Shown: one piece after another, positions 39,348 through 64,000 of the stretch | Position numbering within the stretch: position 1 is the first letter of the stretch | How the letters are laid out: every line of letters begins with the position of its first letter | Assembly: GCA_964106915.2 (NCBI GenBank) | Contig: OZ066914.1 | Source of the DNA: Podarcis gaigeae | Lineage: Eukaryota | DNA length: 64,000 nucleotides | Strand: one strand, 5' to 3' | The notes under the pieces: generated by a model | Database searches by the model: none | Seen by the model: only the letters and a program-made list of their open reading frames with translations | Told to the model about the DNA's origin: nothing | Made by a program: the position numbers and the translations under genes

Positions 39348-40050
39348 TTATATGATAAGATAGTAAGCATTTTATTTTGCTTGCGTTCAAACAACAGAAC
39401 AAAACCTAAAACATCAAGATTATCTGCAAACAGGAACATCTAGCAGCAACAAATATTTTAGCAAGGATGCCTGAAACATCATATCTACCATCACAGAGGA
39501 TCAGTCAACACAGTAGTCACAAAGCTGTCTCTGATAAGTAGGGAATTATGGATGAGAAATATGTCTATTCTGACTATTAACTGGCACGGCCCAAAAACAA
39601 CATTTACTATGTCACCTTAGAGACTAACAGCCTGATCCTTTGTGCATTTCCTTACACACCTCATTGAATACAAGGATACCTGGGTCCCACCTGCACCATG
39701 AAGATAAAGGATGTTAGTCTTATGCCCCTTTAGCAGTCGTTGCTTCCTCCAAAGAACCCTGGAATCTGCAGTTAGTAAGGGATTTGGAGAGTCGTTAGAA
39801 CATTAATAAACTACAGTTCCCTGCAGTATTCGAAACCCCCATTGCTCTAGGCGTATTTTGCGACGGGGAATTTTATGAACGTGGGCAGCTTCTGAGCTCT
39901 GGGTGCAGTACTGTGCCTAAGATTTCAGTTTACAACTGCAGAGTGGAAGGAAAGGAAGACCCTTTTCTGCCTCCCCACTTCCAGTTACTCTCTGAAGACT
40001 GGATAAGAGACCCTTTTAAGAATATTAGGGGGTGGGCAGGGGAAGGACTA

Positions 40051-40402
40051 GGTAAAGGGTAAAGGGACCCCTGACCATTAGGTCCAGTTGTGACCGACTC
40101 TGGGGTTGCGGCGCTCATCTCGCTTTATTGGCCGAGGGAACTGGCGTACAGCTTCCGGGTCATGTGGCCAGCAGGATTAAGCCGCTTCTGGCGAACCAGA
40201 GCAGCGCACAGAAACACCGTTTACCTTCCCGCCAGAGTGGTACCTATTTATCTACTTGCACCTCGTGCTTTCAAACTGCTAGGTTGACAGAAACAGGGAC
40301 CAAGCAACGAGAGCTCACCCCGTTGCGGCAATTCAAACCACCAACCTTCTGATCGGCAAGCCCTAGGCTCTGTGGTTTAACCCACAGCGCCACCCGCGTC
40401 CC
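40051..40402 (-). mobile_element. Sauria SINE
   Basis: Full length; TSD AGGGGAAGGACTAG. Confidence 0.92.
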
Positions 40403-41157
40403 TTTTAGGGGAAGGACTAGACCATGTGAAAAATGAACATAATATTTTAGCTGCAGTTCATTCATTTTCAGCTTCGTATTCTTTGTTATATAAATAAAAA
40501 GTGCACCGAGACATTATGTTGTTGCGCCCATAACCTCGGTTTAAGGTGACGTTTAGCTCCTAGCTTTCATATCTCAGTTTCTAACACTGGTTCCCTGGGT
40601 TCTTGGGGGGAAGCCATGACTGTTAATAGTGGTATAAGAGTGCTTTAAACACACAGGGCTGGATTCAACGAACCCGGGGTGCTAGGAGAAACCAGCAGAC
40701 AGACTCCCGCTAGGCTAGGGCAATAGGGCTTTCCCGCTACTCTCTTCCCCCAGCATATCCTTTGCGCCTTTCCCAAATCTGCTCTGGAGGGTCAAGAGAA
40801 CCCCCAGAACAACCAACGAGGGGTGGGGAAAGGGGAGATTGTTCCATCATGAAAGCAGAAATGCTGGTAGGAAGGTTGCTGAATTGGCGTGGATGTGACC
40901 TTCCTTTCAAACAAGCATACATCAACCACAGATCACACCTATAAACAGTCCTTTGGGTGACCACCTGTGAGAATAAAGACAAGCTGACGACCAGGCAAGA
41001 TTTGCACACCTACGCACACAAAATTACCAACTGCTTTTTCCATTTTAGCTGACAATGACAAACGAGCACGCAAACCAAAATGTCTCCATGGTTGGTCTAA
41101 CTGGCGGGGGGGGGGGGGGACGGACACAATCATGTGAATGTCCCAGAAACCTTATGT

Positions 41158-41456
41158 CAGGGGTCGGCAACCTAAGGCCCATGGGCCAGAAGCAGCCCAC
41201 TGAGGCTGTTTAACCGGCCCACGAACTGCCCCTGAACCGAGATGCCCATGCTGCGCTAAACACAGTGCAGGGACTCTCTTCCGCAGCTCCAGAAATCGCT
41301 TCTGCACATGCCCAGACGCCAGAAATCGCCTCTGCGCAGGCATGATTTTCGGGGTCTGGGCATGCGCAGACTCAATTTCCAGCGTTGCACTGCGGCGGTC
41401 CAGCCCACTGAGGATCTCTGCGGGAGTGATCCGGCCCATGCCCTTGCCAACCCCTG
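41158..41456. mobile_element. hAT MITE
   Basis: TIR CAGGGGTCGGCAA / TTGCCAACCCCTG; 8-bp TSD CCTTATGT. Confidence 0.88.
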
Positions 41457-43850: not shown

Positions 43851-44455
43851 GAGCTGGACCATAAAGAAGGCTGATCGCCGAAGAATGGATGCTTTTGAAT
43901 TATGGTGCTGGAGGAGACTCTTGAAAGCCCCATGGACTGCAAGAAGATCAAACCTCTCCATTCTGAAGGAAATCAGCCCTGAGTGCTCACTGGAAGCAGA
44001 GGCGTAGCGTGGGGGGGTGCAGGGGGGGCCGGCCGCACCGGGCACAACATCTGGGGGTTAGGGTTAGGGGGCGCAAATCCACAGGTTAGGGGGCGCAAAT
44101 CCACAGGTTAAGGGGCGCAAATCCACGGGTTCGGGGGCGCAGATTACTTGCCTTGCCCCGGGTGCTGACAACACACGCTACGCCACTGACTGGAAGGATA
44201 GATCCTGAAGCAGAGGCTCCAAGACTTTGGCCACCTCATGAGAAGAGAAGACTCCCTGGAAAAGACCCTGATGTTGGGAAGGATGGAGGGCACAAGGAGA
44301 AGGGGACGACAGAGGACGAGATGCTTGGATAGTGTTCTCGAAGCTACCAGCATGAGTCTGACCAAACTGCGGGAGGCAGTGGAAGACAGGAGTGCCTGGC
44401 GTGCTCTGGTCCATGGGGTCACGAAGAGTCGGACTAAACGACTAAACAACAACAA
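43851..44455 (+). mobile_element. BovB/RTE LINE 3' fragment interrupted by the hAT MITE
   Basis: BovB sequence is collinear on both sides of the ACTGGAAG duplication; (CAA)n tail. Confidence 0.9.
43997..44188. mobile_element. 192-bp hAT MITE (empty sibling of 63084-63622) nested in a BovB fragment
   Basis: TIR CAGAGGCGTAGCGTG...CACGCTACGCCACTG. Perfect 8-bp TSD ACTGGAAG (43989-43996, 44189-44196). The core is GGGTTAGGGTTAGGGGG plus ~22-bp tandem repeats GGTTAGGGGGCGCAAATCCACA. Confidence 0.92.
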
Positions 44456-52459: not shown

Positions 52460-52938
52460 TCGAGAGGAGATACGATAGCCATATTCAAGTATCTAAAGGG
52501 CTGTCGTATGGAAGATGGAGCAAGCTTGTTTTCTCCTGCTCTGGAGGGCAGAACCCGAACCAATGGCTTCAAGTTGCAAGGCAGGAGGTTCCAACTAAAT
52601 ATCAGGAAGGACATTCTGACAGTAAAACAGTGGAAGGGACTCCCTTAAAAGGTAGTGGATTCTCCTTCACTGGAGGTTCTTAAGCAGAGGGTGAATGGGC
52701 ATCTGCCATGGCTGATTTAATGGAGTTTCTTGCATTGCAAGGGCTTGGACTAGAGCAGTGTTTCCCAACCTTGGGTCTCCAGCTGTTTTTGGACTACAAC
52801 TCCCATCATCCCTTGCTAGCAAGACCAATGGTCAGGGGTGATGGGAATTGTAGTCCAACAGCAGCTGGAGACCCAAGGTTGTTGGGAAACACTGGACTAG
52901 AGGATCCTCGGGGCCCCTTCCAATCCTATGATTCTATG
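52460..52938 (+). mobile_element. CR1 LINE 3' fragment (interrupted by the MITE above)
   Basis: Degenerate CR1 ORF2 C-terminus followed by the CCCTTCCAA...ATGATTCTATGA terminus. Confidence 0.75.
52756..52894. mobile_element. Palindromic hAT MITE (URR1-like) inserted in a CR1 3' end
   Basis: CAGTGTTTCCCAAC...GTTGGGAAACACTG; GGACTACAACTCCCATCATC core; TSD GACTAGAG. Confidence 0.88.
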
Positions 52939-58363: not shown

Positions 58364-58465
58364 CTGCTGCCAGTTGTCTTCCAAGGATGGCAAAGCCGAG
58401 AAGTAACCGGTGTCGTGGACGAGCTGCAGTTCCTGGAATATACTATAACTAGCCAAAACATCCAT
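58364..58465 (-). CDS. KLF7: Krueppel-like factor 7, coding exon 1 (aa 1-34, acidic activation domain)
   Basis: Translates [34 protein letters not shown], the KLF7 N-terminus (human has ...PSLEETWQQ). ATG at 58465-58463; phase-0 donor CAG|GTGAAC at 58363. Confidence 0.97.
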
Positions 58466-58837: not shown

Positions 58838-59099
58838 AGGGATAAATGCTCCCGAACGTGTACAGTGCAAGCCGTCAGCCAGGCAGCCAGAGAGGAGGAG
58901 GAGGAGGAGGGGGACACACTTCTTCTCCACTTGTAGTAAAAAAGCAATTGCCTTCCGGGGCTCTGTTGCTGACTCCAGCGCTTGCACCGGCGGGGAAGGG
59001 GGTGGGGTGGGGATGCAAACTCACTGACACGAGACTGCCATCTATTTCTGCATTGCTGCTCGCTGCTGAATGCAATCTTTGCTCTTTATTTTGGGGAGG

Positions 59100-59600
59100 T
59101 TGCATTTTCCGCCTTGCGCGCGCGCGCGCGCGCTCCTGGAGCCAGGCGCGCTCCCATACTTTCCTCTCTCTCCTTCCCTCCCTCCCTCCTCCCTGCGCGC
59201 AGCCGTGGGATCTTCAGAGGAAACTGTCCATTAAGGCAGCGCGTGACCATGTAAGGCAAGAGGGAGGCGGGCCGCCAGGGCCGCTCATGAAGTCACTGGC
59301 GCCCAATGGGGGCCCGGAGCGAGGCGGCGGAGGCGGGGCTGGGCACGGAAGAGCCGCGGCGATTGGGCCGAGGGCTGGATCCGACGTCCGCCTTATAAGG
59401 CAAGTGTAAGGGGAGCTATTTTTAGAGGGCTATATAAAGGAGCCGGAGCGGCTGGTGCGCGGCGGAGTTTGCAGGAGAGAGCAAGCGCGAGCGCGCCCGG
59501 GAAGCCGTGCGCGGACCTCGGGCTCCGGCGCTTTTGCTTGCAAAGGGGCTCCCGTGGTCGGAGGGTCTTTGCGTTGCAGCAGTAGCAGCAGCCAGAAAGC
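59100..59600 (-). promoter_or_regulatory. KLF7 CpG-island promoter
   Basis: CpG-rich. GC boxes (GGGAGGCGGG 59261, AGGCGGGGCT 59331), CCAAT/ATTGG boxes (~59303, ~59362), CArG CCTTATAAGG 59391-59400, MEF2 CTATTTTTAG 59416-59425, TATA-like TATATAAA 59431. The exact TSS cannot be determined. Confidence 0.8.
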
Positions 59601-61638
59601 ATTTTTTTAAAAAAAAATATTTTGCATGGCCAAGCGGAAAAAAAATCCGATAGAGAACGGGAATAAATGAGAAAGCAGGAATCTCCCGGTTTTACAATGA
59701 GCTATTGGCTGGGGAGGGGGAGCGCGCACAAGTTCAGATCTACTTCCCATTTTCCCTCTTTTAAAAAAAGAGAAGCCAGAATGCAATGGGGGGGGGGGGG
59801 AGAGAGATCGAAGAAAGCGTATTTATCCCGGGGGTTGGTGCTGTTTTGTGAACGCCGTTTGGGAAAGTTTCCGGGCGCTTCATTGCACTTGCTGCAAAAT
59901 GCGTGCATGGACTGGCGATTTGAAAGCGCGCGCGCGCATACACACACAAAACACGCTTTAAGTGCCTGCCGTCCTGTATACGCGCAATTGGGAGTGAGAC
60001 CCGTTGAACTCCATGGGGACTGGCTTCCGAGTAAGCATGCACAGGATCAGGCCCCCGCAACGTCTGCAGACCTTGCAAGTGCTAGCAAAAGTTTGGGTGT
60101 TCGTGGCATCCTGGCATCCTGTGGCAGAGTTACTCCTGGGTATAGCCTCCTCTGTTCCAAGTCTATCTGCCACTGAAAACAAAGTCAGAAATGTTCTGTT
60201 GTGACATGTGGCAGTCGGGGAGCCAGATATTGGACTAGGGAGAAGAAAGCAGAGGATTAAAATCTGTGACAACACTGCGTGAAGATAACCCCTTACGGGT
60301 ATCTGAAAGCACCGGGGACTTATGCCAGAGCACATCCTCTTGCATATTTTGTTGCCTACCAAGTTCTTCGCGCAAAGCAGTTTTAAGTGAGCATGTCAGG
60401 CTGAGTTTTTCCATAAATGGTTCGCTTAGGCCACATCTTCCCCAAGCTTTTCAGAGTGGTGGTAAAGGTAGTTTCAACTTGGAAGAAATGTCAGAGCTAA
60501 GGATTTGCTGCTTGCAATGTGATTTTGTTGAGTGGCAAACGGACAAGTATGCGCTCCTTTCTGTCCATTTTTAAGGCTTGGCAGGAGCTCAACTCTCCAG
60601 CCAGGGCTGGTCAGAATCCAGATGTGTGGGTTTCCTCATCCCCGCTGCCTTTTCTGAGGATGGGACAGAGGGGCTGTCACTTGCTGTAGATGCCACTTAG
60701 TGTACAGTGTTTTGTAACAGTAACCCTGCCCTTTCCTGTGTATATTATACAGTAAACAGCAGCCATGCAGAGAAGGAAAATTGCACATCCTAGTTGTAAT
60801 AGCTGCATGCTGTCTTTGCTGCACCCAGCGGAGGGTTTAAGCTTCTCAGTTTAGATGGGGCAGGGGAGGGTGAACCACAGTGAGGTTGCAAGAATGGGAG
60901 CAGGGCTGGTTGAGGCTGTGGGTGGGAGTTGTAGTCCCAAATATCTGGAGAGCACCGGATATCTGGCGAAGTGCTGGGATATTTGGTGGAAAAGAAGTTC
61001 AATTAAGCAGGCATTTCATGACTTGGGATAGGATCATTTTGAATGTCAACAAGCAAGGAAAGAGTAATATTGAGTTGTCCCTACAGCAATGGGAAGGAAG
61101 GAAGGAAGAGCAGATGTCTGCATTTATTAAGACATGCTGTCTAAAAACTATATCTTATTAAATAAACAAGACATAACCTCCTGGTCAAAGTAGGGTTTGC
61201 ATACAAACAGATTGGCTTGGAATACTGTTTTCTGATCTAGAATAATGGGGGCACACAGTCTAGAATTTTAGTTGGATGTTTTGAAAAATCTCCCCTACCT
61301 TTTTCAGCCCATTCCAGAGCTGAGCAAAAATTTCTCAAGACATTTTTAGGAGAAACAGAGATTTATCTCGTTCTGATTTTACCTAGAAATGTTGTGAATG
61401 CATTCCCCCCCTCCAAATATGCCCCAGCATCTTTATTTTAACGCACGTGTTGACAACCATTCTTTCCTCCACCATCCATGGCCCAAGATGATGCTAGATG
61501 CACTGTGGAAGATGCACAATGGCCAGGCAACAGCAGAAAGGATGAAATCTTTGGGGGGATGAAATTAGGGTGCTGAACACCCCTGGGGGATTTACACTAG
61601 CCTTTGCTGAGCCAGTGTTTGCTCAGCCAGAGTGGACA

Positions 61639-61640
<2 letters not shown>

Positions 61641-61686
<46 letters not shown>

Positions 61687-62455
61687 TTATTATTTGTACC
61701 CCGCCCATCTGGCTGGGTTTCCCCAGCCACTCTGGGCGGCTTCCATAGAAACAAAAAATACACTAAAATATCACACATTAAAAACTTCCCTGAACCTTAA
61801 GAGCCTTAAGATGTCTTCTGAATGTCAGGTAGTTGTTTATCGCTTTGACATCTGATGGGAGGGCATTCCACATGGTGGGCGCCACTACCAAGAAGGCCCT
61901 CTGCCTGGTTCCCTGTAGCTTTGCTTCTTGCAATGAGGGAACCGCCAGAAGGCCCTCGGCACTGGACCTCAGCGTCCGGGCAGAACGATGGGGGTGGAGA
62001 CGCTCCTTCAGGTATACTGGGCCGAGGCCGTTTAGGGCTTTAAAGGTCAACACCAGCACTTTGAATTGTGCTCGGAAACGTACTGGGAGCCAATGTAGGT
62101 CTTTCAAGACCGGTGTTATGTGGTCTCAGCAGCCGCCCCCAGTCACCAGTCTAGCTGCCACATTCTGGATTAGTTGTAGTTTCCGAGTCAACTTCAAAGG
62201 TAGCCCCACGTAGAGCGCATTGCAGTAGTCCAAGCGGGAGATAACTAGAGCATGCACCACCCTGATGAGACAGTTCGCGGGCAGGTAGGGTCTTAGCCTG
62301 CGTACCAGGTGGAGTTGGTAGACAGCTGCCCTGAATACAGAATTGACCTGCGCCTCCATGGACAGCTGTGAGTCCAAAATGACTCCCAGGCTGCGCACCT
62401 GGTCCTTCAGGGGCACAGTTACCCTATTCAGGACCAGGGAGTCCTCCACACCAGC
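61641..62455 (-). mobile_element. L2 LINE 3' fragment with (TAA)n tail
   Basis: ORFs 61778-62107 and 62126-62497 are L2 ORF2 C-terminal peptides. Confidence 0.92.
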
Positions 62456-63083
62456 ACTCCCATATATTTGGCTCAGCCAGGGTAGGAGACTTGGCACCCG
62501 CTGAGCCTGGAATCAGCTGGCTGAGCTGAAGATCAAATGCATCCTCAGCTGCTGATCTTACTGTGCTAGCACCTTGTCACCTGCACGGACGTCTAGTATA
62601 GTTCCAGGCCCAACTGCTTTGTTAACATGAGCAGCTTGACCCGTGGAGCAGAGCAGCAGAAAAAGCTTCCGGAATACAGTATTCCTGCTGATTATTAGGA
62701 GTGGGGAGGTTGGGGCTGTGCAGATGTACTGGTGGACCCAATCCAGCATTCCCACACATGCGTTCACACAGCCCTGACCTTGCCATCTTTTCTCACTTTT
62801 GGCGTCCGTCTGTCTTGAGAGACAACGGAGTGTGCATCTAGGGGTGAAGTCAAACCGTTGTGTTAGCGCCAAAGTTACCTCCCCTTGGCACAAGCCTGGG
62901 CAGTGTGTCTGAAGGTCCTGGGCTGCCCAGGCAAAACAACGCTATCAGCCTCTCTGATGTGGTCCAAAAGAAAGGAGAGCAACCATCGTTCGGACTCAAC
63001 TCCAGATATGTGAAGGATTTACTGATTAGCCCTTTCTTTCCCCAAAGATGTCCCACAAGGCAGTGGAGGTTTAGGGTCAAGAG

Positions 63084-63622
63084 CAGCGGCGTAGCGTGGG
63101 TTGTCAGCACCTGGGGCAAGGCAAGTAATTTGCACCCCCTAACCGGGGGCAAGGCAAGTAATTTGCGCCCCTAACCTGCCGCCGCTGCCAGCTTCTTCTT
63201 GCTGCTGCCTGGGCTAGGGTATTTACGGTAAGGTAACCACGGTGGCGGGTCTGTGTCAGGTGATCTGAGGCGAGTTGCCGCTGGCGCTGCCACCCAAACG
63301 ACGCCGCTTGCCGGGAGGAGGAGGAGGGCAGAGAGGCAAGGAAAATGCAACATAGCCCAGCAGCTGCAGCAGCGGCAGCGGCGGGGCTGTGAGGAGGGGC
63401 TGCCTGGCGCGCCCTCCATGGCCCTGACGAGCACTGAGAGCCGCTGCCTGCCGGACGCCTTCAGCCCGGACGCGCGCACAGCTCGTCGGTTCCGCGAGAC
63501 ATGGGGCTCTGCTACAGCCTGCACCCAAGGCTCTTTGGCGACTCCGGAGGCGGCGAGCGCGCCCCCCCAGATGTTGCGGCCGGTGCGGCCAGCCCCCCTG
63601 CACCCCCCACGCTACGCCACTG
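63084..63622. mobile_element. Non-autonomous hAT element carrying captured host sequence (Pack-hAT)
   Basis: TIR CAGCGGCGTAGCGTGGG...CCCACGCTACGCCACTG. Perfect 8-bp TSD GTCAAGAG (63076-63083, 63623-63630). Both arms match the element at 43997-44188 in opposite orientation. Confidence 0.92.
63501..63563 (+). pseudogene. GNAL: Captured 5' coding fragment of the GNAL long isoform (XL-G-alpha-olf) inside the hAT element
   Basis: ATG in a strong Kozak context (GACATGG) reads MGLCYSLHPRLFGDSGGGERA. The human XL-Golf N-terminus as I recall it is MGLCYSLRPLLFG (11/13 identical). GC-rich UTR-like sequence precedes it and the transposon arm truncates it. Confidence 0.8.
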
Positions 63623-63715
63623 GTCAAGAGTTTTCCTTCTCATAGATGGGCTACCTTCCTAAGTTGATGAGCCCCGTCTGCCCCTCACTTCCCTCTAAGC
63701 AGTAGCAATGAATAA

Positions 63716-64000
63716 AAAGGTAAAGGTACCCCTGCCCGTATGGGCCAGTCTTGCCAGACTCTAGGGTTGTGCGCCCATCTCACTCTAGAGGCCGGGAGCC
63801 AGCGCTGTCCAGAGACACTTCCCGGTCACGTGGCCAGCGTGACAAGCTGCATCTGGCGAGCCAGCGCAGCACACGGAATGCCGTTTACCTTCCCGCTGGT
63901 AAGCGGTCCCTATTTATCTACTTGCACCCGGGGGTGCTTTCGAACTGCTAGGTTGGCAGGCACTGGGACCGAACGATGGGAGCGCACCCCACCGCGGGGA
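63716..64000 (-). mobile_element. Sauria SINE (same subfamily as 38176; cut by the window end)
   Basis: AAAGGTAAAGGTACCCCTGCCCGTA tail and core. Confidence 0.9.

What the first reader, a model, noticed from the sequence alone, without database searches (positions are those of the whole stretch)
63084..63622. Pack-hAT transposon carrying the start of GNAL (XL-Golf), ~3.5 kb upstream of the KLF7 promoter
Seen: a 539-bp element with 17-bp TIRs and a perfect 8-bp TSD (GTCAAGAG). Its arms match the empty 192-bp sibling at 43997-44188, but it holds ~385 bp of CpG-rich foreign sequence (~63179-63563) ending in GAC-ATG-G and MGLCYSLHPRLFGDSGGGERA. Known: 8-bp TSDs with short CAG TIRs indicate hAT elements. 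The long GNAL isoform starts MGLCYSLRPLLFG (from memory), and GNAL is not a KLF7 neighbour in human. Gene-fragment capture by DNA transposons is known as Pack-MULE in plants and Pack-TIR in animals, but I do not recognise this lizard family or this cargo. Inference: a young hAT family captures CpG-island first-exon fragments and carries them, or acquires them in place, here beside a neuronal transcription factor gene.
Basis: partly seen in the sequence, partly recalled or inferred. Interest (0 to 1): 0.92.

Follow-up and report, generated by a model that had tools for sequence, protein, structure and literature searches.

The report
Lizard transposon carrying a gene start
In one wall-lizard lineage a small jumping DNA element landed 4 kb upstream of the KLF7 gene carrying about 385 bases of foreign promoter-like DNA, probably the start of the brain G-protein gene GNAL; this is a real but already described kind of gene-fragment capture, and nothing shows that it affects KLF7.

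Summary
The element is real. 63084-63622 has 17-bp TIRs (one mismatch) and a perfect 8-bp TSD. The orthologous site is empty in Podarcis lilfordi, P. muralis, P. raffonei and Zootoca, so it inserted after the split from P. lilfordi, the closest species sampled. Its arms belong to a young non-autonomous hAT-type family: four cargo-free copies of 146-192 bp, each at its own site. About 385 bp of CpG-rich DNA replaces the family's internal repeat core and has no source nearby. It reads as 322 nt of leader plus 21 codons from a strong ATG.

The GNAL long-isoform identity is likely (about 0.88) but rests on recalled sequence; no tool confirmed it. Donor locus, copy number and expression are untested.

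The closest precedent is the frog Pack-hAT carrying a CAPSL 5' UTR (Tan 2021). This scan has already noted similar cargo-carrying hATs elsewhere in this genome (PKD2, ATP1B3 and others; unchecked by me). Verdict: new member of a known kind; no evidence for an effect on KLF7.

The parts
63076..63083 (.). left copy of the 8-bp target-site duplication
   Evidence: present once at the empty site in P. lilfordi
63084..63622 (+). 539-bp non-autonomous hAT-type element with cargo
63084..63100 (+). left 17-bp TIR (one mismatch to the right TIR, at position 4)
63084..63178 (+). left arm; first 61 nt are 93-95% identical to cargo-free copies in P. lilfordi and P. muralis; 2 of its 3 differences from the majority sequence are CpG transitions
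63109..63174 (+). 33-bp tandem duplication of subterminal sequence (63109-63141 and 63142-63174), absent from all four cargo-free copies
63179..63500 (+). cargo, 322 nt upstream of the ATG: promoter or 5' leader-like, with upstream ATGs at 63345 (15 codons) and 63418 (75 codons, other frame)
   Evidence: no match in the rest of the window or in five orthologous loci
63501..63563 (+). cargo, ATG in strong Kozak context and 21 codons; probable start of the GNAL long isoform (XL-Golf), cut off with no splice donor
   Evidence: sequence: (lipidation-type start in 9 of 5000 shuffles); gene name from recollection, not confirmed by a tool
63501..63662 (+). 53-codon chimeric reading frame running from the cargo through the right arm into the flank; no evidence of expression
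63564..63622 (+). right arm, 90-97% identical to cargo-free copies; the junction lies in a C-run and is uncertain by a few bases; right TIR 63606-63622
63623..63630 (.). right copy of the 8-bp target-site duplication
43997..44188 (-). cargo-free sibling, 192 bp, own 8-bp TSD, inserted in a LINE-like repeat; site empty in P. lilfordi and in paralogous repeat copies
58364..58465 (-). KLF7 first coding exon (neighbour, not part of the element); annotated gene start maps to about 59041-59105, CpG island about 58941-59640

Best explanation
A Pack-hAT. (1, shown) Podarcis carries a young family of 150-190-bp non-autonomous elements with 17-bp TIRs, 8-bp TSDs and an unstable core of 22-bp repeats. 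(2, shown) In this copy the core is replaced by about 385 bp of CpG-island-like DNA that has no source nearby. (3, inferred from recalled sequence) The cargo is the 5' leader and first 21 codons of the GNAL long-isoform exon 1. (4, inferred) It was copied in by template switching during repair or replication of a break in the repeat core; the 33-bp duplication in the adjoining arm and an 8-base motif shared by the cargo end and the family core fit this. (5, inferred) With both ends intact, the loaded element was moved by a hAT transposase supplied in trans and inserted here. (6, shown) The insertion postdates the split from P. lilfordi. (7, inferred) It is most likely a neutral passenger: the exon is truncated, has no splice donor, points away from KLF7, and the arm shows CpG decay.
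For: TIR and TSD. Empty orthologous site in four relatives. Four cargo-free copies at four private sites with different TSDs; reciprocal empty sites clear for three, while the P. lilfordi copy sits in a CA microsatellite. Cargo scores against the window and five loci are no better than shuffles. Start codon with Met-Gly, Cys4, Ser6 and a purine at -3 occurs in 9 of 5000 dinucleotide shuffles (criteria chosen after seeing the sequence). An 11-of-13 start-anchored match to any of 50,000 N-termini has a chance of about 1e-4, if the recalled sequence is right. The published long-isoform exon 1 is 676 nt and contains codon 113, so its leader is at most about 340 nt, in line with the 322 nt here (PMC12408007). 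In Tan et al., in-place captures mostly come from within 15 kb while multicopy ones are distal and GC-rich (PMC8277862).
Against: No tool tied the cargo to GNAL: the 42-residue search returned six unrelated, mostly repetitive proteins, and no paper reachable here prints the N-terminus. No second loaded copy was found in about 570 kb, a very small sample of the genome. Only 6.3-6.8 kb beyond the site on the side away from KLF7 could be checked for a local donor. No autonomous partner was found. Junction microhomology cannot be assigned without the donor sequence.
Confidence: 0.65

Rival explanations
1. Capture in place: a cargo-free element inserted here first and was later broken and filled from the distant GNAL locus by gap repair, without further transposition.
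For: [quoted passage not shown] No second loaded copy was seen. The nearest sampled relative is 3.5% diverged, which leaves time for insertion and then filling.
Against: 57% of the Pack-TIRs in that study lie within 15 kb of the parent; here no donor lies on the KLF7 side or within about 6.5 kb on the other. The family was mobile within Podarcis, so a loaded copy with intact ends could move.
Confidence: 0.13
2. Shrunken composite: two family members flanking or near GNAL exon 1 were first mobilised as one larger three-TIR unit, and an internal deletion later removed the inner end and most of the exon, leaving this two-ended form.
For: Other elements in this genome were reported as three-TIR composites (s1-656164, s1-663188, s1-670733; unchecked by me). 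The exon is cut at a C-run shared with the right arm, as a microhomology-mediated deletion would leave. The duplicated 33 bp could be the remnant of a second left end.
Against: Only two TIRs are present. Both junctions fall inside the family's repeat core, as internal replacement predicts.
Confidence: 0.1
3. The cargo is host CpG-island DNA but not, or not only, GNAL: the peptide likeness is chance or misremembered, or the 5' part comes from a second gene.
For: No database confirmation. A donor-like motif at 63227-63232 follows a run of hydrophobic codons, and CpG o/e is lower in the 5' part (0.67) than in the 3' part (0.95).
Against: The motif appears in 8% of shuffles. The leader length fits the published exon. 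My recalled long-isoform sequence places Lys at 113, as the paper's variant does, which checks the recollection only indirectly.
Confidence: 0.1
4. Assembly artefact or chance arrangement.
Against: A perfect 8-bp duplication of exactly the sequence found once in P. lilfordi, family-specific arms on both sides and no N in the window are not what mis-assembly produces.
Confidence: 0.02

Closest known systems
Pack-hAT-N8_XT carrying 291 bp of the CAPSL 5' UTR in Xenopus tropicalis (Tan et al. 2021, PMC8277862)
   Same: Non-autonomous hAT ends around a few hundred bases of a distant gene's 5' region; absent from the orthologous site in a relative.
   Different: The frog case has a located parent and three copies with distinct TSDs; here neither parent nor second copy is shown. 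The cargo here includes a start codon and 21 codons. A text search of that paper finds no mention of lizard or anole.
Pack-TIRs of animals in general (370 cases in 100 genomes, PMC8277862)
   Same: Cargo of 100-5000 bp (median 224) between the two ends of one TIR family, enriched for exonic DNA.
   Different: Most are old, single-copy and captured from within 15 kb; this one is young, belongs to a recently mobile family and has no nearby donor.
Plant Pack-MULEs and Pack-hATs (Gisby and Catoni 2022, PMC8903248)
   Same: Non-autonomous TIR element with gene fragments; hAT type with 8-nt TSD; GC-rich cargo.
   Different: Plant cases number in the thousands and often join several loci; scale and mosaicism are not measured here.
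hAT superfamily MITE-like elements (Ac, Buster and Tip groups; PMC3942097)
   Same: 10-25-bp TIRs, 8-bp TSDs, conserved ends with repeated subterminal motifs, no coding capacity.
   Different: No transposase was found, so the group cannot be assigned. Targets lack the central TA that I recall for Buster; the nTnnnnAn pattern of Hermes (PMC10368747) fits this site but only one of the five family targets.

Membership tests
hAT superfamily (non-autonomous) | 8-bp target-site duplication | tested here: met
   five copies, five different perfect 8-bp TSDs; single target at the empty site
hAT superfamily (non-autonomous) | short TIRs of 10-25 bp | tested here: met
   17 bp, one mismatch; definition from PMC3942097
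hAT superfamily (non-autonomous) | repeated subterminal motifs inside the ends | tested here: met
   a repeated 22-bp unit and shorter motifs; transposase binding not tested
hAT superfamily (non-autonomous) | autonomous partner encoding a hAT transposase with the same ends | not testable with these tools
   none in the window or five loci; no lizard genome search available
hAT subgroup Ac / Buster / Tip | target-site consensus and transposase phylogeny | tested here: inconclusive
   five targets, no shared pattern; no transposase
Pack-TIR (Tan et al. 2021 criteria) | both ends from one TIR element, covering at least 10 bp of its termini | tested here: met
   criteria
Pack-TIR (Tan et al. 2021 criteria) | internal foreign sequence of 100-5000 bp | tested here: met
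   385 bp absent from four cargo-free copies
Pack-TIR (Tan et al. 2021 criteria) | unique parent copy at 90% identity or more, not flanked by the TE | not testable with these tools
Pack-TIR (Tan et al. 2021 criteria) | not a retrocopy (no intron loss) | not testable with these tools
   needs the donor; the cargo ends before the first expected exon junction
multicopy Pack-TIR (transposed after capture) | several loaded copies with distinct TSDs | tested here: inconclusive
   one copy in about 570 kb examined; far too small a sample
GNAL long-isoform exon 1 (cargo identity) | sequence match to the GNAL locus or protein | tested here: inconclusive
   noise only, as expected for 21 residues against 50%-identity representatives; 11 of 13 residues match a recalled human sequence only
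GNAL long-isoform exon 1 (cargo identity) | CpG-rich first exon with a leader of about 300 nt and a G-alpha-type lipidation start | tested here: met
   compatible with GNAL but not specific to it

The most novel reading that the evidence does not exclude
This element is one of hundreds of Pack-hATs in wall lizards: recently active hAT families that capture CpG-island promoters and first exons at their internal repeat core and spread them, giving plant-like (Pack-MULE-scale) gene-fragment shuffling in an amniote, where published surveys found almost only old, local, single-copy cases. A further step, that this copy acts as a new promoter or enhancer beside KLF7, I put at under 0.1.
Probability: 0.4. 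Interest if true: 0.72.

Novelty: new member of a known kind. Interest (0 to 1): 0.4.

Why it matters
Alone, the element is one more Pack-TIR, with a close published precedent in frog. It is useful as a clean test case. Loaded and cargo-free forms of one family sit 19 kb apart, the insertion is dated by empty sites in relatives, and both junctions fall in the family's repeat core. That makes the open question of how animal DNA transposons capture distant DNA (gap filling in place, template switch then transposition, or composite mobilisation) testable once the donor locus is aligned. If the similar notes from this genome hold, Podarcis would be an amniote with recent, large-scale promoter and first-exon shuffling, which would matter for regulatory evolution and for gene annotation in lacertids. 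No effect on KLF7 is shown.

Tried and rejected
Protein search with the 42 codons at 63438-63563 against cluster representatives: six unrelated, mostly repetitive proteins, none G-alpha; uninformative for so short a query.

I considered reaching a lizard GNAL protein through a typed G-alpha query or motif and left it out: it has no reference and could have drawn in human contigs. No contig that I take for human was fetched or compared.

Papers on GNAL isoforms do not print the N-terminus. The findings index has no GNAL note. Rfam finds nothing between KLF7 and the element.

Rejected: local origin of the cargo on the KLF7 side. Not supported: a canonical G-quadruplex as the break signal, since the strict motif occurs in only one of five copies and not in the core. 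Rejected: that the immediate flank is a common repeat; it is single-copy in the sequence examined.

Full report
Observation. The element spans 63084-63622. The same 8 bases flank it on both sides, and its ends are 17-bp inverted repeats with one mismatch at position 4. A generic scan for such ends with an exact 8-bp duplication finds five elements in the window and none in five shuffles. The window has no N. The first 95 and last 59 bases match the 192-bp element at 43997-44188, which lies in the opposite orientation and has its own TSD. The 385 bases between the arms are 68% GC with CpG o/e 0.80, against 0.40 for the window.

Setting. KLF7 lies on the minus strand. Its exon 2 is 95% identical to P. 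lilfordi KLF7 and 94% to Zootoca. From named cluster members I fetched the KLF7 loci of P. lilfordi, P. muralis, P. raffonei, Lacerta agilis and Zootoca vivipara (L001-L005). Over 4109 aligned columns the window differs by 3.5% from P. lilfordi, 4.4-4.9% from the other two Podarcis and 8-9% from the other genera. It groups with P. lilfordi at 95% bootstrap, so it is a further Podarcis species that I could not name. The element is about 4.0 kb from the annotated gene start and 3.4 kb from the CpG-island edge, with the cargo pointing away from KLF7.

Insertion. P. lilfordi has the flanks joined with exactly one copy of the 8-base target. P. muralis, P. raffonei and Zootoca have the same empty site, one base shorter; L. 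agilis lacks the stretch. This establishes a true insertion after the split from the P. lilfordi line. Within 1.5 kb the window also has a private LINE piece (61642-62454) and a private SINE-like insertion (from 63716). The flank is 85-88% identical to Lacerta and Zootoca, about the locus average. Nothing marks the site as constrained.

Family. Three more cargo-free copies of 146, 158 and 181 bp occur in P. lilfordi and P. muralis, each with its own perfect 8-bp TSD. The two P. muralis sites are cleanly empty in the window, the sibling's site is empty in P. lilfordi, and the P. lilfordi copy sits in a CA microsatellite where the window has no element. No copy is shared between species. Five copies in 371 kb gives about 13 per Mb (95% range 4-31), from one region only. 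The cargo-free copies differ mainly in the number of internal 22-bp repeats. TIR length and 8-bp TSD meet the hAT definition (PMC3942097). No transposase was found, so membership rests on the ends and the subgroup is open.

Junctions. The cargo starts within a repeat unit of the core and ends at the C-run that begins the right arm. An 8-base motif at 63559 is shared by the cargo end and the family core, and occurs only five times in the window; this is a candidate microhomology that needs the donor to confirm. The left arm carries a 33-bp tandem duplication that no cargo-free copy has. Both features fit template switching at an unstable repeat core; that step is inference. Two of the three differences in the first 61 bases are CpG transitions, which suggests the arm has been methylated.

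Cargo. It has no match above shuffle level in the rest of the window or in the five loci. These cover the whole KLF7 side but only 6.3-6.8 kb on the other side. It consists of 322 nt with two upstream ATGs, then an ATG at 63501 in strong context and 21 codons, with no splice donor after them. The frame runs on through the arm to a stop at 63662. A start with Gly2, Cys3 or 4, Ser6 and a purine at -3 appears in 9 of 5000 dinucleotide shuffles (criteria chosen after the fact). If that recollection is right, chance is about 1e-4 even against 50,000 N-termini. [quoted passage not shown] That GNAL and KLF7 are unlinked in other amniotes is also from memory. No tool confirmed the identity. I put it at about 0.88.

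Later work on the stretch was local scripting. A typed GNAL query has no reference and was left out. Donor locus, copy number, read support and expression are therefore untested.

Mechanism. Most likely (0.65): GNAL 5' DNA was copied into the core of a family member by template switching, and the loaded element was then transposed here by a transposase acting in trans. It now sits as a probably neutral passenger. Rivals are capture in place (0.13), a shrunken three-TIR composite (0.10), a different or mosaic donor (0.10) and artefact (0.02). The preference for transposition after capture rests on Tan et al. (PMC8277862): single-copy cases are mostly local, multicopy cases are distal and GC-rich.

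Comparison and verdict. Tan et al. describe a frog hAT that captured 291 bp of the CAPSL 5' UTR and spread to three chromosomes, and one multicopy case in alligator; 13% of their Pack-TIRs hold exonic DNA. Pack-hATs are known in maize (PMC8903248). My paper searches found no report of this for lacertids, but the library lacks most subscription journals. This scan has noted many similar elements elsewhere in this genome, with PKD2, ATP1B3, CENPW and other cargos, some reported as multicopy; I did not check them. This element is a new member of a known kind. The interest lies in the possible family-wide scale, not in this cargo or its position near KLF7. Interest 0.4.

Noticed in passing
window 39824-40589, 41158-41456, 52756-52894: Three other CAG..CTG elements with perfect 8-bp TSDs from different families. 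The first has counterparts with the same TSD in P. lilfordi, P. muralis and L. agilis at 382-1362 bp; the second is shared with P. muralis and P. raffonei; the third was not found at this site in the relatives' scan.
   Followed up: partly
L004 34381-35055 and 62608-63276: Lacerta agilis has a related family with similar terminal bases but a 670-bp AT-rich interior; the two copies are 87% alike and have different TSDs.
   Followed up: partly
window 63179-63240: A run of hydrophobic codons followed by a splice-donor-like motif at 63227-63232; it could be the end of a second gene's first exon, but the motif arises in 8% of shuffles.
   Followed up: partly
window 61642-62454 and 63716-64000: A window-specific LINE 3' fragment with a short-repeat tail and a window-specific SINE-like insertion; with the element, three private insertions within 2.4 kb.
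   Followed up: partly
window 59380-59450: Two TATA-like stretches in the KLF7 CpG island, upstream of the annotated gene start; one reads on the plus strand, which could mark a divergent transcript running toward the element.
   Followed up: no
window 63076-63083 versus L001-L005: The 8-base target has one more base in the window and P. lilfordi than in P. muralis, P. raffonei and Zootoca, a small shared derived change that agrees with the tree.
   Followed up: yes
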